This document shows, one piece after another, positions 1-17,166 of a stretch of 64,000 nt of DNA. The translations under genes were made by a program, and so were the position numbers. How positions within the stretch are numbered: position 1 is the stretch's first letter; every line of letters starts with the position of its first letter. This DNA is from Asterias rubens (lineage: Eukaryota): assembly GCF_902459465.1 (NCBI RefSeq), contig NC_047072.1, positions 16,120,001 through 16,184,000 on the forward strand. The letters run 5' to 3'. The notes beneath the pieces were generated by a model. That model saw only the letters and a list, made by a program, of their open reading frames with translations, ran no database searches and was not told the DNA's origin.

Positions 1-494
1 TAAAGTCAGATGGCTTCTGAATGGAACCCTCGATAACATAAAGTCAGATGGCTTCTGAATGGAACCCTCGATAACATAAAGTCAGATGGCTTCTGAATGG
101 AACCCTCGATAACATAAAGTCAGATGGCTTCTGAATGGAACCCTCGATAACATAAAGTCAGATGGCTTCTGAATGGAACCCTCGATAACAAAAAGTCAGA
201 TGGCTTCTGAATGGAACCCTCGATAACATAAAGTCAGATGGCTTCTGAATGGAACCCTCGATAACATAAAGTCAGATGGCTTCTGAATGGAACCCTCGAT
301 AACATAAAGTCAGATGGCTTCTGAATGGAACCCTCGATAACATAAAGTCAGATGGCTTCTGAATGGAACCCTCGATAACATAAAGTCAGATGGCTTCTGA
401 ATGGAACCCTCGATAACATAAAGTCAGATGGCTTCTGAATGGAACCCTCGATAACATAAAGTCAGATGGCTTCTGAATGGAACCCTCGATAACA
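1..494. repeat. 38-bp minisatellite, 13 copies visible (cut by the window edge)
   Basis: Unit taaagtcagatggcttctgaatggaaccctcgataaca, almost invariant; lies in a REPS intron. Confidence 0.97.
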
Positions 495-767
495 TTAAGG
501 CAACTTTTACAAGCAACTGCCGTGCATGCTACAAAACCTTTATGGTAGCACATTAGTCTTTTTCAAACAATGTCTTACGATCCCAAAGAATAGTATGTTA
601 ACATTCAACTCTCTTCTTGGAAATTGCCTGGAACTGTCCATCTGTAAATTGCCTTGTGTGACATAGACCTTATCGCAAATATTGACAAGCGCGCGTCAGG
701 CGTGGAATGAGGTGCATGGTAGATAGACCAGCATGTGCCTCATTCAATGAATAGCCTTACTGCCTAC

Positions 768-3700
768 CTGAATGAGTTCTTTGTCTTCCTTCAGCGTCCG
801 GTGCTATCTTAACCGTCTTGCCATCCGGAGCAACATGAAGAGCAACTGGCTGGAAGATGTTAGCATCCTTTACAATCAATCAGAGAACATGTCAATCAAT
901 TTACATCCCACTAAGCAACTTTAGATCATAGCGGAAATCAAACAGGGAGGTTTTTTATGGCTAGGGAGCGTCTCACACAGTACTTACAGGGTCTGGAGAT
1001 ATGGAGGCAAAGTCAAAATTAGCAGGAGATTGTGAAGATGGCGACTGAGTGGCAGGAAAAGGAGAATCAGCAAATGTGGCCCAATTCTGTAGGATGCAAA
1101 AATAACAAGACATGGTGGTGCATGGATCAAATACAGTGCTTGGATTCAGCTGACCACTAAAGATCTTATGCATTGACGTCATCCAGCCGCCATCTTAGAG
1201 GTAAATCGATGCTGAAACAATCAAAATGCAAAGATTTTTTTGAGCGGCGCCATGTTTGGCCATGACGGCAGCTCTTTTACCTCTTGGTAAGGGCGCCCTA
1301 CTAATATGACATCATGTACATAAGTTCTATTTCATACAGCTGCTTAAGCACAAAAAGTAGCTATGCACAACAAATTTATGCTTACTGAAAAGGTTACCAG
1401 CCAAAATACCATGTCACTCATACAACTTGTGACTGGTCCTGCAAATTTTTGCCAAGCAAACAAAATCTGTGAGCAAAATTGTCTGCTTAAGCAGCTCTAT
1501 GAAATTGGGCATTGGAGGTGAAGGCGTAAATAATGTATTTGGTCAAAATCCAATACAAGGATTACAATACTTTGACATCTAGGCAAACCAATGGTCAATC
1601 CAATACAAGGATTACAATACTTTGACATCTAGGCAAACCAATGGTCAATCCAATACAAGGATTACAATACTTTGACATCTAGGCAAACCAATGGTCAATC
1701 CAATACAAGGATTACAATACTTTGACATCTAGGCAAACCAATGGTCAATCCAATACAAGGATTACAATACTTTGACATCTAGGCAAACCAATGGTCAATC
1801 CAATACAAGGATTACAATACTTTGACATCTAGGCAAACCAATGGTCAATCCAATACAAGGATCACAATACTTTGACATCTAGGCAAACCAATGGTCAATC
1901 CAATACAAGGATCACAATACTTTGACATCTAGGCAAACCAATGGTCAATCCAATACAAGGATCACAATACTTTGACATCTAGGCAAACCAATGGTCAATC
2001 CAATACAAGGATTACAATACTTTGACATCTAGGCAAACCAATGGTCAATCCAATACAAGGATTACAATACTTTGACATCTAGGCAAACCAATGGTCAATC
2101 CAATACAAGGATTACAATACTTTGACATCTAGGCAAACCAATTAGGGTAACAACATTCTTTATACATCTATTCAACATGCAAACAAGAAGAAGAAAGAAT
2201 AACATACCTCATCCTTCTCCTTCTTAGTAGAAGGTGTGGGCGGAGTTACGCTCCTTGCTGGGGTAGTCACTTGTTTCGGAACACCAACTGCAGGAATAAA
2301 GTAGGGGGCTACAAGTCAAGGTAAACACAAATAACAATTAAAGCAACATAAACCCTAGCTCATAACCTAATAATAATATCAAAGTGTTATATAGCGCACG
2401 TGTCTACCTAACAAGGTACTCAAGGCGCCGACAAACTTTCGGTAATTGAAGTTATGAATTATGAGACCAAATTATGTAGCACTTCATAAGGGTTTACAAG
2501 GTGCTACGGCGCATTTAGCAGCCACAATTAGGAACACCGATACGAACACTTCATAAGGGTTTACAAGGTGCTACGGCGCATTTAGCAGCCACAATTAGGA
2601 ACACCGATACGAACCCCTTCTCTTTTTGATAACTGCACTGGGTTCTTTTACATGCGTTTCAAAACACATGGGACCAACGGCATTACATCCCATCCGAAGA
2701 ACGAAGCAATGGTTAAGTGTCTTGCTTAAGGACACATTGTCACGGCTGGGGATTCGAACCCACACTCTGCTGTTCAGAAACACCAACATTTGAATTCGGT
2801 CCTCTTAACCGCTCGGCCACGGCACTTCCACTGCTGCTTTGATTGTTTCAAAATATTGAAATATTTCAAGATCGTGTAATCCTCTAGTTTCTTAGACATT
2901 CGTGATTTTAATAATAATAGTAATAATAATGATAATAATAATAGACATTTGTATGTCTTTTATTTGCATCTGTTTGTTTAGCCTTCGAGAAAGGGTCTAC
3001 TAAGGTCAAAATGTCTTGCAACGAACTACTTTTTGCATTTATACCATAGGTCATTTTGGTTGGTAAGCACCATGCAACACCTCATTCTATTTTCTCATCG
3101 AGACAATTGTATACTACATTGCAAATAAGTGCTTTAACAATGCTTAAATCAATCTATCAATTAATTAAAGATGCAAATGAGATGCAAATGAGGTCCAACC
3201 TTCCTCTTGATTGGGACTAATGACAGGAATGAGACTGGCTGGCAGCTGATCAGGTAAATCCACTTTGTGTTTCCTAGCAACGACAAGATGCATCGCTGTA
3301 CAGAACTCCGCTAAGGATAATGTTCCATCTTTGTTTACATCAGAAAGTTGCCTTCAAAATAAAAACATCAATATGAACTGTATCATGTCTGTAGCATAAC
3401 AATAACAAATGACAATTTATAAGGCGCTATTCCATCAAGATCATAGCACGCTTGAAAGCAATTAAAAATGGGGTAAGGTGAGTCTTTAGAACTTTATAAA
3501 ATGCAGATAGAGTAACAGCTTCCCTAATGGCAGTAGGAAGATTGTTCCAATCAATGGCCCAGCTACTAACAGCTTCCCTAATGGCAGTAGGAAGATTGTT
3601 CCAATCAATGGCCCAGCTACTAACAGCTTCCCTAATGTCAGTAGGAAGATTGTTCCAATCAATGGCCCAGCTACTAACAGCTTCCCTAATGTCAGTAGGA

Positions 3701-6700
3701 AGTTTGTTCCAATCAATGGCCCAGCTACTAACAGCTTCCCTAATGTCAGTAGGAAGATTGTTCCAATCAATGGCCCAGCTACTAACAGCTTCCCTAATGG
3801 CAGTAGGAAGATTGTTCCAATCAATGGCCCAGCTACTAACAGCTTCCCTAATGTCAGTAGGAAGATTGTTCCAATCAATGGCCCAGCTACTAACAGCTTC
3901 CCTAATGGCAGTAGGAAGATTGTTCCAATCAATGGCCCAGCTACTAACAGCTTCCCTAATGTCAGTAGGAAGATTGTTCCAATCAATGGCCCAGCTACTA
4001 ACAGCTTCCCTAATGTCAGTAGGAAGATTGTTCCAATCAATGGCCCAGCTACTAACAGCTTCCCTAATGTCAGTAGGAAGATTGTTCCAATCAATGGCCC
4101 AGCTACTAACAGCTTCCCTAATGGCAGTAGGAAGATTGTTCCAATCAATGGCCCAGCTACTAACAGCTTCCCTAATGTCAGTAGGAAGATTGTTCCAATC
4201 AATGGCCCAGCTACTAACAGCTTCCCTAATGGCAGTAGGAAGATTGTTCCAATCAATGGCCCAGCTACTAACAGCTTCCCTAATGGCAGTAGGAAGATTG
4301 TTCCAATCAATGGCCCAGCTAGTAACAGCTTCCCTAATGGCAGTAGGAAGATTGTTCAAATCATTGGCCCAGCTACTAACAGCTTCCCTAATGGCAGTAG
4401 GAAGATTGTTCCAATCAATGGCCAAGCTACTAACAGCTTCCCTAATGGCAGTAGGAAGATTGTTCAAATCATTGGCCCAGCTACTAACAGCTTCCCTAAT
4501 GGCAGTAGGAAGATTGTTCCAATCAATGGCCCAGCTACTAACAGCTTTCCTAATGGCAGTAGGAAGATTGTTCAAATCAATGGCCCAGCTACTAACAGCT
4601 TCCCTAATGGCAGTAGGAAGATTGTTCAAATCAATGGCCCAGCTACTAACAGCTTCCCTAATGGCAGTAGGAAGATTGTTCAAATCATTGGCCCAGCTAC
4701 TAACAGCTTCCCTAATGGCAGTAGGAAGATTGTTCCAATCAATGGCCCAGCTACTAACAGCTTCCCTAATGGCAGTAGGAAGATTGTTCCAATCAATGGC
4801 CCAGCTACTAACAGCTTCCCTAATGGCAGTAGGAAGATTGTTCCAATCAATGGCCCAGCTACTAACAGCTTCCCTAATGGCAGTAGGAAGATTGTTCCAA
4901 TCAATGGCCCAGCTACTAACAGCTTCCCTAATGGCAGTAGGAAGATTGTTCCAATCAATGGCCCAGCTACTAACAGCTTCCCTAATGGCAGTAGGAAGAT
5001 TGTTCCAATCAATGGCCCAGCTACTAACAGCTTCCCTAATGGCAGTAGGAAGATTGTTCCAATCAATGGCCCAGCTACTAACAGCTTCCCTAATGGCAGT
5101 AGGAAGATTGTTCCAATCAATGGCCCAGCTACTAACAGCTTCCCTAATGGCAGTAGGAAGATTGTTCCAATCAATGGCCCAGCTACTAACAGCTTCCCTA
5201 ATGGCAGTAGGAAGATTGTTCCAATCAATGGCCCAGCTACTAACAGCTTCCCTAATGGCAGTAGGAAGATTGTTCCAATCAATGGCCCAGCTACTAACAG
5301 CTTCCCCAATGGCAGTAGGAAGATTGTTCCAATCAATGGCCCAGCTACTAACAGCTTCCCTAATGTCAGTATGAAGATTGTTCAAATCATTGGCCCAGCT
5401 ACTAACAGCTTCCCTAATGGCAGTAGGAAGATTGTTCCAATCAATGGCCCAGCTACTAACAGCTTCCCTAATGTCAGTAGGAAGATTGTTCCAATCAATG
5501 GCCCAGCTACTAACAGCTTCCCTAATGGCAGTAGGAAGATTGTTCCAATCATTGGCCCAGCTACTAACAGCTTCCCTAATGGCAGTAGGAAGATTGTTCC
5601 AATCAATGGCCCAGCTACTAACAGCTTCCCTAATGGCAGTAGGAAGATTGTTCCAATCAATGGCCCAGCTACTAACAGCTTCCCTAATGGCAGTAGGAAG
5701 ATTGTTCCAATCAATGGCCCAGCTACTAACAGCTTCCCTAATGTCAGTAGGAAGATTGTTCAAATCATTGGCCCAGCTACTAACAGCTTCCCTAATGGCA
5801 GTAGGAAGATTGTTCCAATCAATGGCCCAGCTACATTGTACAATGAAAGCTATTTGACTTACATTTAGAACTTTGTTTGCTCTTGGTTACATTCAAGCGT
5901 GTGATTTCGATCGAAGAACACGTGGAGGATTGTAATGTGACAGTAAAGTGAAAATATAGAGTGCTAATTTTGTCTCTGATTAGTTGCAATGAAAGGAACA
6001 AAGATTCATCAAGTCAACATTTGTACCAGTATATTCTGAATATCTTCAGAAGAAAGCCACTTTGTATCTTACCATATTTTGGATAATTCAGCTGTTGGGA
6101 GTTTAGACTTTTCAAAGAATTCTTTAGAATCAGCACCTGTAAGTAAAACAAGTCCAACTTCCATTATCAGTAATAATCAATAATAATAATAGCTTCACAG
6201 ACTGGGAATAATGGCCATACAAACTTACTTAGTGAGAAGTACTGCAGCTATTTTAAGAAATGATTCCTTTAAAGTTATGATGGTTTGGATAATTCTCTTA
6301 CACGTAGTTAGAGTAGCGATTGTCCAAGTGTAGATGCATACAAACTGTCAAAGAACAACAACTCTTTTTGAGTAGTGGTCGAGTCCTAATGGGAGACTTT
6401 CTGGGACGATAGAGGGCAGCAGACTTACCGGGTAAATCCATTGTTCTCAGAATTATGCGCATGTTCAGAACTACGTAAACAATGGAAATTTACCCGGTAT
6501 GTCTGCTGCCGCCTAGCGTTGGAAAGTCTCCTATTGGTCCCTCTCCGAGCTGTGACTACTCAAAAGAGATCTATTGACCCTAATACTATAACGGGGCTCG
6601 AAATTAACACTGGACCGCAAGCTTGGGACCAGTGATTAAAGCATCAAGCCAGGAAACTAATAATAGGACAAGCCCATACTTCATTATGAAATATCTTTGT

Positions 6701-9700
6701 GATAAAAATGTTGACTGTGAATGTGATAACTATCTTTCAATTCTCTTTCAAGATTATCAAAGTACACTAAAACACATAAACACAAATAAAATAGATCTTC
6801 TTTGAGTGCCTGTTCAACTAATTTTGATTTTGGTCTTGTAAAAAAAAATTCTGATCCAGTAAAAATGTTGAGCTGCAAGCCCCGCAGTCTTTTGCATTTT
6901 CCACCAAAATTCAAGCCCTTCTAATCTCCACCACTCACCTGATAATAAACCCTTCGTGTTCGGTATTAACGTCTTGAACTGATTGGTGTAATACTCTCGT
7001 TGTTCTGGAGTTATCAACCAAACATCCTCACTGCTATCGTGACCTGAACTTTTATCTGAACCAGATCGATCTCGATTCTCTGGAAACTTTGCCCAGGATG
7101 TGTCACTTGATAAATTATTCACTGAGTTCGTTGTTTTTGAGTCACCTAAAAAGACAGCAAATTAAAAACATTAAAAATTGAAAAATGTCAGTATTTTTCC
7201 TAAAAAGTGTGGATTTTATTGTTGTCTTTACTGTGGAAAGCAATGAATCTACTCTTTTAAATACCAGTAGTCTTTTCCAACCTTAGACTTGCTTAAAGAA
7301 ATAAGGTTCAATTGCAACATAAACCTCACAGTATGCACTTTTTATTTTCATAAACCAAGTGTAAAACATATAATCTGAATAAACATATCATCTTGACATT
7401 CAAGTGTTGTTCAGTTGTTCTTTCATTCTCAACTCCTTGATTCCTCTTGATCATCTTGACATTCAAGTGTTGTTCAGTTGTTATTTCATTCTCAACTCCT
7501 TGATTCCTCTTGATCATCTTGACATTCAAGTGTTGTTCAGTTGTTATTTCATTCTCAACTCCTTGATTCCTCTTGATCATCTTGACATTCAAGTGTTGTT
7601 CAGTTGTTCTTTCATTCTCAACTCCTTGATTCATCTTGACTTTTAAGAAAGCACAGGCTGCATAATACCACTTCAGTGAAATATCACATTATTTTGCAGT
7701 GTCAACATTGAACTGTTTCCATCTTCAAAGTCATTTGTATGATAAGACTTATGATGTATTAGAAAAAAAAACTCTGCTAAGGTCGAAATGACAGGCCATT
7801 AACTTTTGGGGGGCATTCATGACATAGGTCTTTTTGGTGGGTAAGCAGTTTGCAACAGCTAATTCTATTTTCTCATGAAGTAATAAAAACGCATTGGCAT
7901 AGCATCAAATGAATATCAAAGACATTTAAAGCACTTCAAAAAACTACAATTATAAGCAAGGCAAAAAACCACATTATTTATAAAATCACATTAGAAATTG
8001 AAATGATTTGCAGAGTGAAAGATTTCTTAAATGAGGAGATTGTACCTTGCCGATCTCTCTCATCAAACGATGCCCATCCTTCATCAGACTTTGGCAAGAA
8101 TCCAGGAGTATTTCCCTGTTTATCTAGGATGGGTTGATGTTCACGAGCGTTGTTCGGTGATGATAAACTTGGCTGTTGCTCAATTGTATTAGGTGGGGAC
8201 AATGGAGGGTTGTCATTAAAAGGGGAGGAGTCTCGAGGTGAAGACGGTGGCGGGGAACTAGCAATATTCTGATGGCAAACAAATATCAAATCAAAATTGA
8301 AGTAAGATTTGTCAAGTTCACAAGAATGCTTGTCATCCATCCTCGCCAGGTCAAACAAATAGCATCCAGGATGGGGGTAAAAGGATCCAGAATGGGAGTA
8401 AAAGGATTTAGGATAATGAAGTATAATTCCTCTATACACAGTCTTGGCTGGTATTTTTTATATATCCTTTTTTTTATGTAAGTTGGCCCCAAACAAGGCT
8501 AAAAGCCACTCTTGGTATGGGGCTACAATAAGAACAATTATTGAATGTGAAAAGTACATAATGTAAGATTTGTAAATTAATCCTTGAGTTGAAATGATCA
8601 GCGTGTAAAACTTACAAGAGGTGGTACATGAGCTGTACGAGTTGGAGACATCGTTGGATCACCATGGGGGTAAGATCCGTGAGATCTCGGACTTGGTTGA
8701 AATTTGCCAGACAGAACAGCACTGCGATCAGGACCAAGATCTATGAAAGCTGGATTGACGAACTCCATTTGACCAGGATCATCTGGGTACAAATAGTGAT
8801 AAATAATTTCACTCCATTTGACCAGGATCATCTGGGTACAAATAGTGATAAATAATTTCACTCCATTTGACCAGGATCATCTGGGTACAAATAGTGATAA
8901 ATAATTTCACTCCATTTGACCAGGATCATCTGGGTACAAAAAGTGATAAATAATTTCACTCCATTTGACCAGGATCATCTGGGTACAAAAAGTGATAAAT
9001 AATTTCACTCCATTTGACCAGGATCATCTGGGTACAAATAGTGATCAATAATTTCACTCCATTTGACCAGGATCATCTAGGTACAAATAGTGATAAATAA
9101 TTTCACTCCATTTGACCAGGATCATCTGGGTACAAATAGTGATAAATAATTTCACTCCATTTGACCAGGATCATCTGGGTACAAATAGTGATAAATAATT
9201 TCCTTTTTCCAAACACAAACATTTCTTCTATTAACTTAAATGAAAAACTTTGATTGTAAAATGGTTTACTTTCAAACTGAATTTAGACTGGTCTATATTA
9301 CCTGGATCTGCTTGAGTTTTAACACCAGCATTTGGGCGAGCCACAAATGTTGGCAGTGGAACTTCATTCCCTGCAAATAAATGATGGTCAAAAAGTGAGT
9401 TATGTATCTTCTCACTTGGCTATGAATGTAAGTATGAATGTACATTAATAATACACAAAGCGCTAGACTAAACCAAGTTCACATGTTGAGTCCAAAATTG
9501 AATAGATGTGGGTGTCATCCGAGAGAAGGACACAGCCTTCTGTAGTGGAGCACCCAAGACTGCTGTCAAATTAAAGTAGAAAGCAGTTCAGAGTTAACAA
9601 TTCATTTCAGTTGCAAACAAATCACAATATGTCTCCGATACAATTCTTTCAGTGACATACAAAGACACATTTAAGCCAAGAATAAACATATATAAAAACA

Positions 9701-10737
9701 TGTCATGTTCTTTGTACATGCAAGTCAGTTCCCTTTCTTTTAGTGCTTGGTGATATTAAAATAAAAATGCAAAATGACCATGTACCTTGAACCATCATTT
9801 CCTTGGACACTGGTAAGGGTATAGCGTTTTGAGCCATAGCTATCAGTTTCAAAGCGATGTAGAACTGACTTCGACCAAAGTGACCAACTCGATTGGCTCC
9901 ACATATTTCAACAATCTGCAAACAGAAATGAAAAAAAAAGGAATGAAATGTTATTTATTTAGTCATATGATATGGCCTTCATGGCCTTTTTCTTTGAATG
10001 CACGCTTTTACGCGTACACTATTTCTTGACAAGGTAACGTAAATTAAACAATGTGACACATGACAAATCAGATCAAACCAGTATGCTAATTATGTGCGGA
10101 CGCTACTTAGTACTGTAGTGGACATTGTTTAGCATGACACTTGTTAGTTCTCGTAACATAACACAATTTCCTGTATTATTATCCAATAAAAAAAAACTTA
10201 AAAAGGCTAAATAAAATGTTGTAATGTTCTCTGCAAGTGCAAAATGTTTTTCAATTAATTAAATGTTTCACTTCCAGCCAGTTCAAGTTTCTGTGTTCCA
10301 AAAATGTTTGTACGGACTTTTGAAAAAAGTAATATTTGGCAGAGAGTGGAAACCAACAAATTGTCAAAAATTGATGTGTTGATGAAAAGAGTTTGCACTT
10401 CAAACAAAGTAAAACTTAGATTTATTAGAAATCGTAAGTCAAGTGAAAACCCTTTCTCCCGCTCTGCTCTGGCTGGATGAATCAATGTCAGATGAGATAG
10501 TCACAACGAACTACACAGACTTGAAACAATACAAACTACCAAATAGTACAAATAATACTCCGGTTGCTTGACACTATAATAATTTACCTGTTGCAAAACC
10601 TCTGGATTCAAACCAGACCTCAGGAAAAACTCAAATACTTCGACCGTCTTGATTCGACCTGCGCTCTCCGTATCCAGTGTGCTGAACAACGCCGAGTAAC
10701 ACTGCTGTTCTTTCGGGCTCAAAAATGATCCATCCAT
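768..10737 (-). CDS. REPS1: RalBP1-associated Eps-homology domain protein (REPS1/2 orthologue), 5' part; the gene continues beyond the left window edge
   Basis: Eleven GT-AG exons join in frame: 10737-10588, 9915-9786, 9370-9302, 8782-8616, 8268-8046, 7145-6939, 6136-6073, 3351-3200, 2308-2208, 1086-988, 867-768. The N-terminal EH-like domain ([26 protein letters not shown]) and second EH domain ([15 protein letters not shown]...[46 protein letters not shown]) match vertebrate REPS1/2 as I recall them. Confidence 0.93.
1545..2141. repeat. 50-bp minisatellite, ~12 copies
   Basis: Unit caatccaatacaaggattacaatactttgacatctaggcaaaccaatggt; lies in a REPS intron. Confidence 0.96.
2365..2825 (-). 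mobile_element. tRNA-derived SINE with an internal ~67-bp duplication and a LINE-like (TAA)n tail
   Basis: On the minus strand: A-box TGGCCGAGCGG, B-box GGTTCGAATCC, tail ...tgcgctatataacac plus (tta)n. Related copies at ~12870-13082 (-), ~37690-37855 (-), ~47370-47470 (-) and ~59580-59830 (+). Confidence 0.8.
3513..5833. repeat. 54-bp minisatellite, ~43 copies, embedded in an L2-type LINE 3' relic
   Basis: Unit acagcttccctaatggcagtaggaagattgttccaatcaatggcccagctacta. It generates the spurious 778-aa and 615-aa ORFs. The flanks translate on the minus strand to YNPPRVLRS...AF...[25 protein letters not shown]. Confidence 0.95.
7388..7640. repeat. 63-bp minisatellite, 4 copies
   Basis: Unit catcttgacattcaagtgttgttcagttgttctttcattctcaactccttgattcctcttgat, in REPS intron 5. 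Confidence 0.93.
8762..9202. repeat. 49-bp minisatellite, 9 copies, each containing the REPS exon-4 splice acceptor
   Basis: Minus-strand unit gaaattatttatcactatttgtacccag|ATGATCCTGGTCAAATGGAGT; copies start at 8762 + 49n. Confidence 0.96.
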
Positions 10738-10887
10738 GGCCAAAATAATTTAATGTCATAGCTCATATGCCTTATTTACCTTTACAGCTATCGCTGTACA
10801 ATGAGGTAACTAAGGACGAAGGAGTAGGAAGAAAATGGGGCTGAAATTGTCTTACTTTACATTCACAAAGTTCCATTACTCTCACGA

Positions 10888-11798: not shown

Positions 11799-14700
11799 AT
11801 GCATTTTGATGAAATCTTAGCTCATGTTGGTGAGTTTGGCAGATTTCAACAAGTTGTGTACTTCACGGCTTGTATTTTGGTTATTCCTGTGTATTGGCAT
11901 ACAAATGTACAGGTATGTTTAACTCGAATTGGTTTGAAAATAAAATTCTGGTTTAAAATCCGTTATTCATCTTTTAGTTTTAGTGTGTAGTTTTGTTCAA
12001 GGGACTTTCGACTTGTATAAGGCCTATTTTCAAAGCTTTGAAGAAAAAAAATCAAAATGCGATTTATTGTTGATTGTTATCAACAACGAGGAATCACTGC
12101 CAGTGTTTATGGCACTTAATGTATCTTTTTGTTTTCTTCCGGTAAATAATCTAAATTAATCAGAATAATTTGTTTTCATCGATATTCAGGTCTTTTCAGC
12201 AGCAAGTACAAATCACTGGTGTACAGTGCCGGACATAAACCAAGAATGTGACGAATGGAATCTTACTAGTTCACAATGCACTGAGCAGATAATGATGCTT
12301 GGTATACCGCCCTCTATTGACACTACCTACCCTAATGATAACTGCCAACGATATAATTTGACAGGGGTACCATTGGTTTATAACACGTCCGGAGCGGATC
12401 TTGGGGTCGAGGTGATCCAGTGCGACAAAGGATGGATGTACAATGCTACTTCATATGCTACAACTATCATTTCTGATGTAAGTGATTAAATTCAATTCAA
12501 CAAAATTCAATACAAAACATTTACAATACAGCTAAAACGTAAACATTGACTGATTGAAATGTTATCTGACCCGAGAAATGAATAATAAAAAAATTGGGTT
12601 TGAGTCATTCGCAGTTAAGTCGAGCTCAAGTCTATATCAAGTGGTCTACTACAAATCAAGGGTTGTAAAATAAAACATCCTCGAAGATTAAACAAAGGAA
12701 GATAATAACAATGGGCTTCTTATTAAAGAGCTCATGGGCGGTCGCTAAAACGTAACTTACAGTGCTTCCTGCAAGGTATGTGGGGAAATCGGTATGATAC
12801 CTAATAATGTTTAAGGATAAGCACTATGATTGTTTACAAATTAATGTGGTGGATAATACAGCCAATCAAACAGAGCGAATCCCTTCTCTTTTCCATAAGT
12901 GCACTGGGTTTACACACCACACGGGACCAACGGCTTAACCTCCCGACCGAGGGATGCAGCAGTATTAATGGTTAAGTTTCTTGCAAAGTGTCACGACTGG
13001 GACTCGAACCCGCCATACTCTGTTGGGTCAGAAACACCAGAGTTTAAATCCGGTGCTGTTTCATAATAACCGTTAGGCCATGAATGGATGCGGTGTACTT
13101 TGTACCAACCTCAAAACGTGAATCATTGAACGTGTTTTTCCCCCGCAGTTTGATTTGGTTTGTGATGAAGGAAATCGAGCAGATATTGCACAGATGGCAT
13201 TCTCTATTGGAACTGTCGTAGGAGCCGTCCTATTTGGATACCTTTCCGATAGGTAACAGTTTAAATCAAACAAATATTAATAGTTTTTGGAAAAAGATAA
13301 TGTTGTCAAAAAGCAAGAAAAACAATTAAAGTGCACAACACGTTTGAGAATCAATAATTATCGGTAAATAATGATTATGACACGCAGTTGCCGACTACAT
13401 TGGACACCTTTGGTAATGAAAACAATTGTCAAAGACCAGGTGAGTGTAACTATCTCTTGGTTTACCCAAACATAATGCATAACAAATTTCTTTCTCTAAA
13501 ACTCACGCACTTCAGAGGGAGCCATTTCTCCCAATGTGATACATCAACAGCCTTCACTGCTCGTTACCAAGAAAGTTTTCATGCATCTACAATTAATTTG
13601 AGTAATAAACCAATAGTGCCTGTAATTGACTTTGATTGTGGATGAATCTCTCTGCAGGTTTGGACGTCGGTCAATCTTTCTGGTTTGTCTCCTCGTCCAA
13701 GGACTTGTTGGTTTAATTATTGCCTTCTCACCTAGTTTCATATTCTACACGATATTTCGGACCGTTCTTGGACTGGCTAACCAAACTGTGATCCAACTTG
13801 GCTTCGTCTTGGGTTAGTAAGAACTTTTGTTTTAAATAATTGTAGACAGACCATTTTGTTTTTCTATAAATAGCAATGATCGTGATTTATTATTTCCTTT
13901 TTATAATCCAGGTAATGAATTTACTGGTCCTTCGAAACGAGTTTTTGCTGGTGTGGTGATAAGTTTCTTTCTGAGTTTCGGTAATATGACATTAGCTTTA
14001 CTGGCCGCGTTCTGTCGTAGTTGGCGTCTATTACAAATCGTGATTTCTATTCCTCCACTTCTTGGGATATTATTATTGGCGTGAGTATTGTTTAATATTA
14101 ATGATTGATAAACAAACATCTGTGATAAGAAGACATTAAACAGCTACTTGAGTGTCAATTATTGTCCAGCAATTCGATGTCAAAACTTTTGTAACTTTAA
14201 TTGTTTATCATTCGATTGCAATTTTTATAATCATTTTGACAAGTCTGAATTTTTCGTTATTATCGGTCAAAATAATTAGACCCAACCTCAATGTTTTGAT
14301 AAACGCTTCTCTGATGTCATGTGTGGGATTTTGCTTTTCTGTACCTCCTTTGCTACAAATCGGCTGCAAAACAGAGCTCTCATAAAATGACGGGAGTGGT
14401 GACGTAATGGGGATAATGAGAAGTGTCTTTAAAGATATTGTTTTTCTTATAAAATAATGTAAAAAACTAGATTTCGTTTTATAATAATCGAAAACATGAG
14501 TTTAATCTAAGATCACTTGTCGTTTTCGTCCAAGCTGGTCTTAAGGTTCAAGGTTTAGTCATATCAACAGTTTCAACAAGAAATTATCACTCAAGAGCAA
14601 TCAGTTTAAAGAATACAATATATCAAGATGAAAATGATACCGCAGAGAGGGATCCATTTTAGAAGCAAAGCTTGTGGGCATTGGTCTCTAAGACATGCAT

Positions 14701-17166
14701 TTGCATTGAGGCGCAGAATATCAATTACAAATCGGTGAACTAAAAAGTCGACAAGTTGATTCAAAAATTTGCATAAAATCACGACTAACTGTGAATTCAC
14801 GCAGATTTATTCCAGAATCTGCAAGATGGTTGGTTTCTGTTGGTAAAGTTCAATTGGCAGAGAAGATCATTCGCAAGGCAGCTAAAGTCAACGGTGTTCC
14901 ACAACCAGATGTCATCTTTACTGAGAATGAAATAAAGGAATTACAGGTTTGTGTTTTTGTCTTCAACAATCTCTTTACTTTGCACACGCGCCTTGGAATA
15001 GGCAACCAGAATGGTGGCGTTCTTCAAATGCCTGACGATTGATTGTTTAATCGATTGATTTAATTATTTCTTGTATGACTGATTGGTTTATTTTATCTTG
15101 AATGATTGATTGTTTGGTAGATTGATTGATTGATTGATTGATTGCACAAAGCATTTTTATAAACTCTAACAAACTTGTTATAAATATCTCTACTTGTTCC
15201 CATATACAGGAACCAAACGAAGCGTCGGTTTTTGATTTATTGAAGTACCCAACTCTTAGGAAACGGATTCTAATCATTGTATGGATATCGTAAGTTTACT
15301 CAATACTGTGAATAATTCAATCAAATTAAACGCATAGTGTTTAATGTCATTTTAATTAAACCTTAATAAGTATAAGCAGCCATCTGTATTGCCAATTTGA
15401 AACACAAAGTCGGGCGTTTTGCACGAGAACGGCTTGCAGTACGTACACATTTGTCACAAAACTCATTTCACGATTGGCTAGTAAACAACGCGGCGGCACA
15501 TTTAGAGCGACGACGAGCCAAAAATGCAAATTGTCAGCAAAAATGGCGTCAATAATGCATGTTGTTATATTTTAGTGATTTGTCATTTACAGTGGAAATA
15601 AAGATGTAAACGTAAAAGAGAGAGAAGACGCCCCTAAATTGTTGAATGAATTTAATTGAACTGAAGACGAGCAGAGTATACTGTTCGAGACGTCGAAACC
15701 ACATTAGCTCTTCTCAGAGCCAACACTCACTCAAAAGAGATTTATACATGGTTGTACCCGCATGTTTGCTATCGATTTATAGTTTATTCTCGAACTTGAC
15801 AGCTTTGTCATAAACTACCGCGAGAGAAGAAATTAACTTTAATATGTTTGTAATTTCTCTTCTAGAATGGTTGCTGGTCTAACCTTCTTTGGGCTGACGT
15901 TAAATACTGGAGGTTCAGGAACCAGTGACTACATTTCCTTCCTACTGTCGGGGCTGATTGAGATCCCTGCCTATGTCTTATGTCTTATATTCCTCGATAA
16001 AATCGGTCGTCGTTTCATGACGGTTGGGTTTTTCTTGATTGGAGCTAGTGCGTGTTTAGTTACGGCGTGGCTTGGTAAGAAGAAGCACATTGGCACGACC
16101 AGATGAGTTTGAAAATTAAGACAATACGGTTACACCAATGTATATACTACATGTGCAATTCACAGCAAAAATACGATGGGCAAAACATTTACATAGAAAG
16201 GTGAAAACGAAATGAACTAACTTAAAATAATCAATAAATAAAAAATGGACAGAGTTAGTTATAAAAACATCAAGGGCAAAGTAGAATCATTCAATGATTG
16301 CATACTAAGCTTTAAGTGTTGTTTCATTATCAACTTCTTTGTTCCTGTAACTCCTTGAATTGTACTTGTTGCTCTTGTATGGTGTAGGCCGAACAAATAA
16401 TAATGATAATAACCTTCCAATGTTTTAGAACCTGGAATCGTGAAGACGTCCGTGTCTCTCCTTGGGAAGTTTGGTGCCTCAGGAGCTCTTTGTATTGTTC
16501 CGTTTTATTGCCTAGAACTTCTACCTACGCCCGTTAGGTAAAGGACGTTTTAATTTTTAAAGGTTATCATTTATAAGCTTTCTTTAAAATCATCTTCTTG
16601 CCCAAAATGTCTACACCTACTCATCACAGGTTGTTGCAATTATAATTGTACTGAATACAGGTCCGCTGGTATGGGACTCCAACTGATGGGTCTTGGCATT
16701 GGATCCATCTTAGCTCCAGTATGTCTTATTCTTCAAGACCTTTGGGATCCAAGCCTTATGTTGATATTTGGACTACTTTGCTTACTGTCTGCTCTACCTA
16801 CATTCATGTTACCTGAGACTGCAGGGAAAGCATTACCAGAGACAATAGCAGAAGGAGAAAGCTTTGGCAAAAAGTAAGTCTTTAAGATCTGATTATCTTT
16901 GGTAAGATCAATGCGCATATTCAAACTTGATTTTAAGTTTTAGATGTGTTTTACCTCAATTTTTTTCTTTTTTTTTCTTGTGAAATTAATTTGTACGAGA
17001 CCTCTCGCTTGTAAAAACGTGTATTTTGTGTGTTTTTGGCTTCAGAACGATCAGCAGCGAAGAAGTAACGGCAGATGACGTAATTCCAATGGCTGTGTCC
17101 TCGGTTGGAGTTCAAACCATACCTCAAGGACATTTGGAGACTTTTGTAAATCATGGATTTAAATAA
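11799..17166 (+). CDS. SLC22-family (organic cation/anion transporter-like) MFS transporter, ~567 aa
   Basis: Eleven in-frame exons: 11799-11912, 12190-12477, 13149-13252, 13658-13812, 13912-14080, 14805-14946, 15210-15289, 15866-16074, 16429-16537, 16661-16873, 17046-17166 (1704 nt). Family motifs: FDEILAHVGEFGRFQ, Cys-containing extracellular loop ending FDLVCD, GYLSDRFGRR, IPESARWL, ELLPTPVR, LPETAGKALPET. The subfamily cannot be assigned by eye. Confidence 0.92.
15661..15790 (+). mobile_element. Penelope-like element terminus with a degenerate hammerhead motif
   Basis: CTGAAGA-c-GAGCAG-agtata-CTGTTC-GAGA-CGTC; the conserved GAAA is mutated to GAGA. Lies in an SLC22 intron. Confidence 0.55.

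What the first reader, a model, noticed from the sequence alone, without database searches (positions are those of the whole stretch)
8616..9302. Nine stacked splice acceptors in REPS, eight of which lead straight to a stop codon
Seen in sequence: the 49-bp unit spans the intron 3/exon 4 boundary, so AG acceptors sit at exon starts 8782, 8831 ... 9174. Only the last one reached (8782) continues into coding sequence ([11 protein letters not shown]). The other eight read DDPGQME-TGA and would truncate REPS at ~123 aa, leaving only the first EH-like domain. Removing eight units restores a 127-nt intron. Established: the spliceosome usually takes the first AG after a branch point. Inference: either the cell bypasses eight near-identical sites, or repeat copy number acts as a dosage control through NMD, or this allele is hypomorphic.
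Basis: partly seen in the sequence, partly recalled or inferred. Interest (0 to 1): 0.72.

Follow-up and report, generated by a model that had tools for sequence, protein, structure and literature searches.

The report
Splice-acceptor minisatellite in starfish REPS1 gene
A young 49-base tandem repeat has copied the splice acceptor of one exon of a starfish endocytosis gene nine times, but every transcript examined uses only the last, original copy, so it looks like a harmless exon-boundary minisatellite of a kind already described in amphioxus and in the human F7 gene.

Summary
On the minus strand, window 8762-9202 holds 9.0 copies of a 49-bp unit. Each unit is 29 nt of intron 3 (ending in AG) plus the first 20 nt of exon 4 of the Asterias rubens REPS1-like gene. 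Each unit junction creates an in-frame TGA.

Short-read contig depth supports a multi-copy array of about 6-9 units per haplotype. The unit occurs nowhere else in the genome. The sister species A. amurensis has exactly one unit, so the expansion is young and lineage-specific.

Transcript contigs from three studies, and all four RefSeq isoforms, join donor 9302 only to the last acceptor, 8782. No array sequence appears in any RNA contig set.

My reading: this is a neutral "mirage", an exon-boundary minisatellite as described in amphioxus, and the acceptor-side mirror of the human F7 intron-7 VNTR. The eight upstream copies are silent pseudo-acceptors removed with the intron. This genome is full of young minisatellites (12% of the window), and the scan has already noted two similar arrays on other DNA of this genome (GATD1, sAC).

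A small NMD-cleared leak, and therefore a copy-number effect on dosage, is not excluded. The array genotype of the RNA animals is unknown, and contigs hide rare isoforms.

The parts
9302..9369 (-). Exon 3 of the REPS1-like gene. The donor follows it (…CAGATCCAG|GTAATA, GT at 9301-9300).
   Evidence: Transcript contigs X15, X16 and X3 cover 9302-9369 and join it to 8782 and to 9785. Sequence read.
8783..9301 (-). Intron 3 as actually spliced: 519 nt, GT..AG. It is 99 nt of unique sequence plus 8 full units plus the intronic 29 nt of unit 9.
   Evidence: Joint 8782/9302 'skips 519, CT..AC' in three RNA runs. Unit list.
8762..9202 (-). 49-bp x 9.0 minisatellite. Each unit is 29 nt of intron 3' end (putative branch point, pyrimidine tract, CAG) plus the first 20 nt of exon 4.
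   Evidence: Short-read depth about 6x the flanks. Unit unique to this locus.
8811..9202 (-). Units 1-8: eight pseudo-acceptors (first 'exon' bases 9174, 9125, 9076, 9027, 8978, 8929, 8880, 8831). Each is followed 20 nt later by an in-frame TGA formed at the unit junction (9154-9152, then every 49 nt down to 8811-8809).
   Evidence: in-silico splicing: stop at codon 126 for all eight. None is used in any transcript contig.
8616..8782 (-). Exon 4 (167 nt), entered through the authentic acceptor (AG at 8784-8783) of unit 9. It encodes (D)[20 protein letters not shown]…VPPL.
   Evidence: The [17 protein letters not shown] motif is invariant in five starfish sequences.
8046..8268 (-). Exon 5. Its downstream junctions mean that a stop in an extended exon 4 would be premature.
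   Evidence: The loose end at 8044 matches the start of exon 6 at about 7144.
9785..9915 (-). Exon 2 (EH domain 1, second part).
10588..10743 (-). Coding part of exon 1. The annotated Met is at 10737 (MDGSF…).

Best explanation
This is a young minisatellite, specific to the Asterias rubens lineage, that arose by tandem duplication of a 49-bp segment straddling the intron 3/exon 4 boundary of the REPS1-like gene (an exon-boundary minisatellite, or 'mirage'). The gene is still spliced from donor 9302 to the most downstream acceptor (8782), the only copy followed by the rest of exon 4. The eight upstream copies behave as silent pseudo-acceptors and are removed as part of an intron lengthened from about 127-140 nt to 519 nt. 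What is shown: the array, its copy-number support, its absence in the sister species, and exclusive use of 8782 in assembled transcripts. What is inferred: each unit carries its own branch point, pyrimidine tract and AG; the exon-adjacent copy wins because 3' splice-site recognition is reinforced by the real exon body and its downstream donor (exon definition), whereas the pseudo-sites have only 20 nt of exon sequence followed by A/T-rich intron; and any rare use of a pseudo-site gives a stop-containing mRNA that NMD would remove. The array itself has no function. It is one of many neutral minisatellites in a genome prone to making them.
For: The array is real and multi-copy (and the X1 depths), and it is unique to this locus. 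A. amurensis has one unit with the same flanks and a 140-nt intron. Acanthaster and Patiria also have single acceptors. Transcript contigs from three studies join 9302 to 8782 with no other joint, and all four RefSeq isoforms share that junction. Run X3 shows introns 1, 2 and 4 at about 3-9x against exons at about 105-125x, yet shows no array k-mers, although these would be amplified 6-9 fold. No truncated 123/125-aa product is in the 5.8-billion protein collection. The window carries 18 young minisatellites, 12% of its bases. All five arrays inside this gene are single-copy in A. amurensis, so arrays arise here indiscriminately. There is precedent for such arrays leaving splicing intact: amphioxus mirages, including globin BflGb6 (3' intron end plus 5' exon part) (PMC3087553; PMC3902484), and the human F7 IVS7 VNTR, where only the exon-adjacent site of 5-9 identical donors is used (PMC1557585).
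Against: The RNA evidence consists of assembled contigs, which drop rare isoforms, and the tool warns that a filter may leave records out. The array genotype of the RNA animals is unknown, and they are not the genome individual. NMD would hide pseudo-site use at steady state. All nine sites are identical from -29 to +20, and early globin duplication experiments gave contradictory results on which copy is chosen (summarised in PMC1557585), so exclusive distal choice is not a foregone conclusion. The branch point was not mapped.
Confidence: 0.75

Rival explanations
1. Leaky pseudo-acceptors: a meaningful fraction of pre-mRNAs splice to one of the eight upstream copies, and the stop-containing mRNAs are destroyed by NMD. 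Copy number would then tune REPS1 dosage, making this allele hypomorphic.
For: The nine sites are identical from -29 to +20. The upstream ones are transcribed first and lie closer to the donor. Downstream exon junctions exist, so the stops are premature. Intronic VNTRs that shift splicing towards NMD isoforms are known, for example TERT VNTR6-1 (PMC11830802, abstract seen). Contigs cannot show rare or degraded isoforms.
Against: No array k-mers occur in three RNA contig sets, including X3 with exon depth about 125 and visible neighbouring introns. If the animals carry the array and nothing was filtered, that bounds steady-state array-containing RNA at roughly 2% or less. The genome individual appears to carry long arrays on both haplotypes, which is not what a clearly deleterious allele would suggest. 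Amphioxus mirages and the F7 VNTR leave splicing intact.
Confidence: 0.15
2. Assembly artefact: the true locus has one or very few units, and the nine copies come from long-read mis-assembly.
For: Variant-specific unitigs for units 3-6 were not seen among the laid X1 contigs, so the four unit variants are unconfirmed. X1 may come from the same individual as the assembly.
Against: The two repeat unitigs in short-read contigs have 6.0-6.3 times the flank depth, including the 60-nt unitig made only of unit-to-unit junction k-mers, which cannot exist in a single-unit allele. The unit occurs nowhere else in the genome.
Confidence: 0.04
3. Purposeful truncated isoform: a pseudo-acceptor is used in some tissue or stage to make a 123-aa protein with the first EH domain only.
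For: The stop lies just after the first EH domain and the conserved DPDDPGQME stretch.
Against: No such transcript or product was found. The sister species lacks the array altogether, so any such isoform would be a very recent novelty. The product would come from an NMD-target mRNA.
Confidence: 0.02

Closest known systems
[quoted passage not shown]
   Same: They are head-to-tail repeats of tens to about 160 bp whose unit spans an exon-intron boundary and so multiplies a splice signal. BflGb6 duplicates the 3' end of an intron plus the 5' part of the exon, exactly as here. Regular splicing is not disturbed, and copy number differs between haplotypes (PMC3087553; PMC3902484).
   Different: The phylum differs (echinoderm, not cephalochordate). 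Here the unit junction creates an immediate in-frame stop. Length polymorphism and somatic instability were not tested here.
Human F7 intron 7 37-bp VNTR (5-9 identical 5' splice sites)
   Same: A minisatellite whose first unit contains the authentic splice junction. Several identical pseudo-sites lie inside the intron, and physiologically only the exon-adjacent site is used (PMC1557585).
   Different: F7 multiplies the donor and this array multiplies the acceptor, which needs a branch point and pyrimidine tract as well. The F7 result rests on 50 minigene constructs, whereas here there are only assembled transcripts.
Regulatory intronic VNTRs that shift splicing, e.g. TERT intron 6 VNTR6-1
   Same: An intronic minisatellite in a protein-coding gene, with a conceivable route to an NMD isoform depending on repeat length (PMC11830802, abstract).
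   Different: The TERT VNTR does not contain the splice site itself, and its effect on isoform ratios was measured. No isoform shift is seen here.
Tandem (NAGNAG-type) alternative acceptors
   Same: Several AG acceptors sit in a row at one exon start.
   Different: Those lie 3-18 nt apart, share one branch point and pyrimidine tract, and both are used, giving subtle in-frame variants (papers listed). Here the sites are 49 nt apart, each has its own upstream signals, and only one is used.

Membership tests
Exon-boundary minisatellite ('mirage') | Head-to-tail tandem repeat with a minisatellite-size unit | tested here: met
   49 bp x 9.0, 98% matches
Exon-boundary minisatellite ('mirage') | The unit spans a real intron/exon boundary, so the splice signal is multiplied | tested here: met
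   The boundary at 8782/8783 is fixed by transcript contigs. The unit is 29 nt of intron plus 20 nt of exon.
Exon-boundary minisatellite ('mirage') | Regular splicing is not disturbed and the mRNA uses the authentic site | tested here: met
   Three RNA contig sets and four RefSeq isoforms use only 8782. Rare isoforms are not excluded.
Exon-boundary minisatellite ('mirage') | Length instability or polymorphism between haplotypes and individuals | not testable with these tools
   There are only indirect signs. The sister species has one unit, units 5 and 6 share a variant, and depth fits either 9/9 with variants or about 6-7 on average without them.
F7-type pseudo-splice-site VNTR | Identical pseudo-sites are silent while the exon-adjacent site is used | tested here: met
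   This is the acceptor-side mirror of the F7 donor case.
F7-type pseudo-splice-site VNTR | Pseudo-sites are intrinsically functional when the authentic site is removed | not testable with these tools
   This needs minigenes.
Regulatory splicing VNTR (dosage control via NMD) | The isoform ratio or mRNA level depends on copy number | not testable with these tools
   There are no genotyped individuals with raw RNA reads. No stop-containing isoform is seen in contigs or in the protein collection.
NAGNAG / adjacent tandem acceptors | Acceptors at most about 18 nt apart that share upstream signals, with both used | tested here: not met
   Spacing is 49 nt and only one site is used.
REPS1 (RalBP1-associated Eps-domain protein) | Two EH domains and orthology to named REPS1 proteins | tested here: met
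   Pfam EH, E 5.5e-29, two stretches. Window exons are 100% identical to A. rubens REPS1-like isoform X3. Orthologues occur across metazoa.

The most novel reading that the evidence does not exclude
The nine identical acceptor modules are not fully silent. A copy-number-dependent fraction of pre-mRNA is lost to stop-containing, NMD-degraded isoforms, which would make this polymorphic minisatellite a natural quantitative modifier of REPS1 dosage in A. rubens. It would also be a ready-made natural model for how branch point and 3' splice site are chosen among identical competitors, the acceptor-side counterpart of the F7 system.
Probability: 0.12. Interest if true: 0.5.

Novelty: new member of a known kind. 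Interest (0 to 1): 0.25.

Why it matters
In itself it matters little, because the gene appears to be spliced normally. It does add an echinoderm example, and a clean acceptor-side one, to the small set of exon-boundary minisatellites known from amphioxus and the human F7 gene. Together with the two similar arrays already noted in this genome, it suggests that A. rubens produces such structures often. Nine identical branch-point/pyrimidine-tract/AG modules in a natural gene, with a one-unit sister species as control, would be a convenient system to test exon-definition against proximity or scanning models of 3' splice-site choice. For annotators it is a warning that such arrays are not alternative-exon or truncation devices.

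Tried and rejected
- **ORF-level protein search** with the exon-4 ORF, to find other individuals' contigs: blank.
- **Exact look-ups** of isoforms X2 of A. amurensis and Patiria: not on record. This was solved by using the longest isoforms.
- **Exact look-up of the antisense ORF** across exon 4 and unit 9, to find other contigs with the array: blank.
- **P0132** turned out to be only an exon-1 fragment from a metagenome scaffold.
- **Search for a truncated 123/125-aa product:** none found.
- **Dispersed-repeat origin of the unit:** rejected, as the unit is found only here.
- **Alternative haplotig in the assembly:** none.
- **RNA hairpin placing the acceptor AG in a loop:** it is present in every unit alike, and the fold is not better than shuffles (z -1.47), so it cannot explain site choice.
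- **Variant unitig in X1:** I first read the X1 depth of 75 in bin 9064-9160 as a variant-specific unitig. It is just the 7-nt overlap of the 9154-9202 unitig (7 x 1042 / 97). The four unit variants therefore remain unconfirmed by short reads.
- **Other splicing routes:** recursive splicing or 9-nt micro-exons using GGTCAA as donor were considered and dropped, because there is no GT at the exon 3/unit junction and the introns would be 40 nt.
- **Tool limits:** No raw reads were available, only contigs.

Full report
**What is there.** I read the region on the minus strand. Exon 3 ends …CAGATCCAG and is followed by GTAATA. Then come 99 nt of unique intron, then nine head-to-tail copies of a 49-nt unit (one search lists them), then the rest of exon 4.

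Tandem Repeats Finder gives 8762-9202, period 49, 9.0 copies, 98% matches, score 854. The repeat finder shows strict 49-nt register.

Units 1, 2, 7, 8 and 9 are identical. Unit 3 has TAG for CAG at the acceptor, unit 4 has one T>G, and units 5 and 6 share one A>T. That shared variant shows that already-variant units were duplicated again.

Each unit is 29 nt of intron ending in AG plus the first 20 nt of exon 4. The last T of a unit and the first GA of the next form a TGA in the reading frame.

Only 8782 stays open. The other eight stop after DDPGQME, which gives 123 aa from the annotated Met. The intron is 519 nt, or 127 nt without eight units.

**The gene.** The exon-4 peptide finds a single 100% match, an 802-aa protein. 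Its source names it ralBP1-associated Eps domain-containing protein 1-like isoform X3 of Asterias rubens. It has two EH domains. The genome size of 417.6 Mb in 150 contigs fits.

The stretch [17 protein letters not shown] across the exon 3/4 junction is invariant in A. rubens, A. amurensis, Patiria, Acanthaster and one further starfish contig. The junction is therefore under strong protein-level constraint.

**Is the array real?** The 98-nt two-unit probe hits only this locus in the whole assembly. The unique intron flank has no second copy or haplotig.

In Logan contigs of a DNA run that holds 95% of the stretch (X1, possibly the assembly's own sample), the flanks have depth 152-166. Two repeat unitigs stand out:
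- One is a 49-nt unitig equal to one unit (9154-9202), with depth 1042.
- The other is a 60-nt unitig made only of unit-to-unit junction words (8781-8840), with depth 975.

The ratios to the flanks are 6.29 and 5.96. Counting 31-mers in the assembled array predicts 5.68 and 5.97.

If the four unit variants are real and were popped as bubbles, this fits nine units on both haplotypes. If they are long-read errors, it means about 6-7 identical units per haplotype on average. Variant-specific unitigs were not among the laid records, so I cannot decide between these.

Either way a single-unit locus is excluded, because junction words cannot exist in one unit. A 9/1 heterozygote (predicted ratio about 3.3) does not fit either.

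**Origin.** The A. amurensis orthologue (L007) has the same donor, the same unique intron sequence apart from two small indels, and one copy of the unit. Its exon 4 follows directly, and the intron is 140 nt. Acanthaster and Patiria also have a single acceptor, behind long unrelated introns. The expansion therefore happened in the A. rubens lineage after the split from A. amurensis.

It is not special to this spot. The 64-kb window holds 18 distinct young minisatellites (periods 10-179 nt, 88-100% matches), together about 7.8 kb or 12% of the window. All five arrays lying in introns of this one gene correspond to single-copy sequence with directly adjoining flanks in A. amurensis. In such a genome some arrays will straddle splice sites by chance. 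Earlier notes of this scan list two more in the same genome, GATD1 on the acceptor side and sAC on the donor side. I did not check those arrays myself.

**Which acceptor is used?** Two RNA-like runs and one of unrecorded type with an exon-like coverage pattern, from three studies (X15, X16, X3), gave contigs identical to the window's exons. Each contig joins 10588|9915, 9785|9369, 9302|8782 and 8616|8268, all GT..AG on the minus strand. The contigs run on through …GGAGTTCGTC…, so the joint is unambiguously to the last unit. No other joint was reported at a threshold of 2%.

All RefSeq isoforms X1-X4 of A. rubens carry the same junction.

In X3, neighbouring introns are visible: intron 2 at depth about 6, intron 4 at 7-9, and intron 1 at about 3, against exons at 105-125. 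Intron 3 shows nothing, neither its unique 99 nt nor the array, although array words would be amplified 6-9 fold.

Suppose those animals carry the array and no filter removed such contigs. If Logan also discards words seen fewer than about twice (from my memory of how Logan is built, not from any tool output), array-containing RNA would be about 2% or less of the mRNA; this rough bound covers unspliced RNA and pseudo-site isoforms together.

A search for a truncated product of the right length found none.

The limits are plain. Contigs hide rare isoforms, the tool warns that holes prove nothing, NMD would lower the steady state of such isoforms, and the array genotype of the RNA animals is unknown.

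**How it most likely works.** The AG-free zone upstream of each acceptor reaches back only 29 nt, to the GGAG of the previous unit. By the established first-AG-downstream-of-the-branch rule, the branch point used for 8782 must therefore lie within or just before unit 9, that is, in duplicated sequence. A branch in the unique intron part would meet eight good CAG/TAG sites first. Each unit is thus probably a complete 3' splice-site module. This is an inference, since the branch was not mapped.

What distinguishes the last module is only what follows position +20: 147 nt of real exon and a donor at 8616/8615. The pseudo-sites are followed instead by A/T-rich intron sequence. I therefore infer that exon definition (downstream donor plus exon-body enhancers) selects the exon-adjacent copy.

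This matches the human F7 intron-7 VNTR, where only the exon-adjacent site of 5-9 identical donors is used although the others are functional (PMC1557585). A hairpin that puts the AG in a loop exists in every unit and is not significant, so it explains nothing. Any residual pseudo-site use gives a premature stop upstream of many exon junctions and would be expected to be degraded.

**Comparison with what is known.** Tandem repeats spanning exon-intron boundaries were named 'mirages' in amphioxus (Adh3, troponin C, globins, PGBD5). Globin BflGb6 duplicates the 3' end of an intron with the 5' part of the exon, differs in copy number between haplotypes, and does not disturb splicing (PMC3087553; PMC3902484).

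The present array meets the three defining features I could test. Polymorphism could not be tested.

It is not a NAGNAG-type tandem acceptor, given the 49-nt spacing and single site used. There is also no evidence that it acts like regulatory VNTRs such as TERT VNTR6-1.

This is a new member of a known kind, a neutral exon-boundary minisatellite in a minisatellite-rich starfish genome. Interest is low to moderate. Its main value is as a natural acceptor-side model for splice-site choice.

Noticed in passing
window 1-499, 1547-2142, 3513-5834, 7387-7639, 8762-9202 versus L007: All five large, young minisatellites in introns of the A. rubens REPS1-like gene (38, 50, 54, 63 and 49-bp units, up to 43 copies) are single-copy with directly adjoining flanks in A. 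amurensis. This suggests a recent burst or high rate of minisatellite birth in A. rubens, unless the amurensis assembly collapsed them all.
   Followed up: partly
L005:158-706 (897-nt contig of GCA_014845345.1): A contig of another starfish assembly carries exons 2, 3 and 4 of the REPS1 orthologue fused without introns 2 and 3. It is still flanked by intron-like sequence with an acceptor (…tgcag|ATTGTT) and a donor (…CTCTTG|gtaagt). This could be real loss of adjacent introns, a retro-copy, or partly spliced RNA in a DNA assembly.
   Followed up: no
window 8616-8782 (exon 4, around GKF|QPSPRS), L006:13080-13100, L008:5825-5840: Both Asterias species lack a 16-17-aa segment (PPxxWxVGQVxGxxGP) that is conserved in Patiria, Acanthaster and L005. 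In Patiria and Acanthaster an intron follows …PPTDW. Asterias seems to have an in-frame deletion together with loss of that intron.
   Followed up: partly
window 8486-8534 (intron 4): A short stretch has depth about 13,000 in DNA contigs (roughly 80x the flanks). Many contigs end there with unrelated loose ends, in RNA runs too. This looks like a high-copy dispersed repeat fragment inside intron 4.
   Followed up: no
P0001 residues 115-131; window exon 3/4 junction: The motif [17 protein letters not shown] between the two EH domains is invariant across five starfish sequences, while its surroundings vary. It may be a short linear binding motif. Its function is not known to me.
   Followed up: no
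window 11799-16877, + strand: A run of ORF pieces on the opposite strand just upstream of REPS1 (MHFDEILAHVGEFGRFQQ…, …LIGASACLVTAWL…, …LPETAGKALPETI…) looks like the exons of an SLC22-type organic ion transporter. This was judged by eye only.
   Followed up: no
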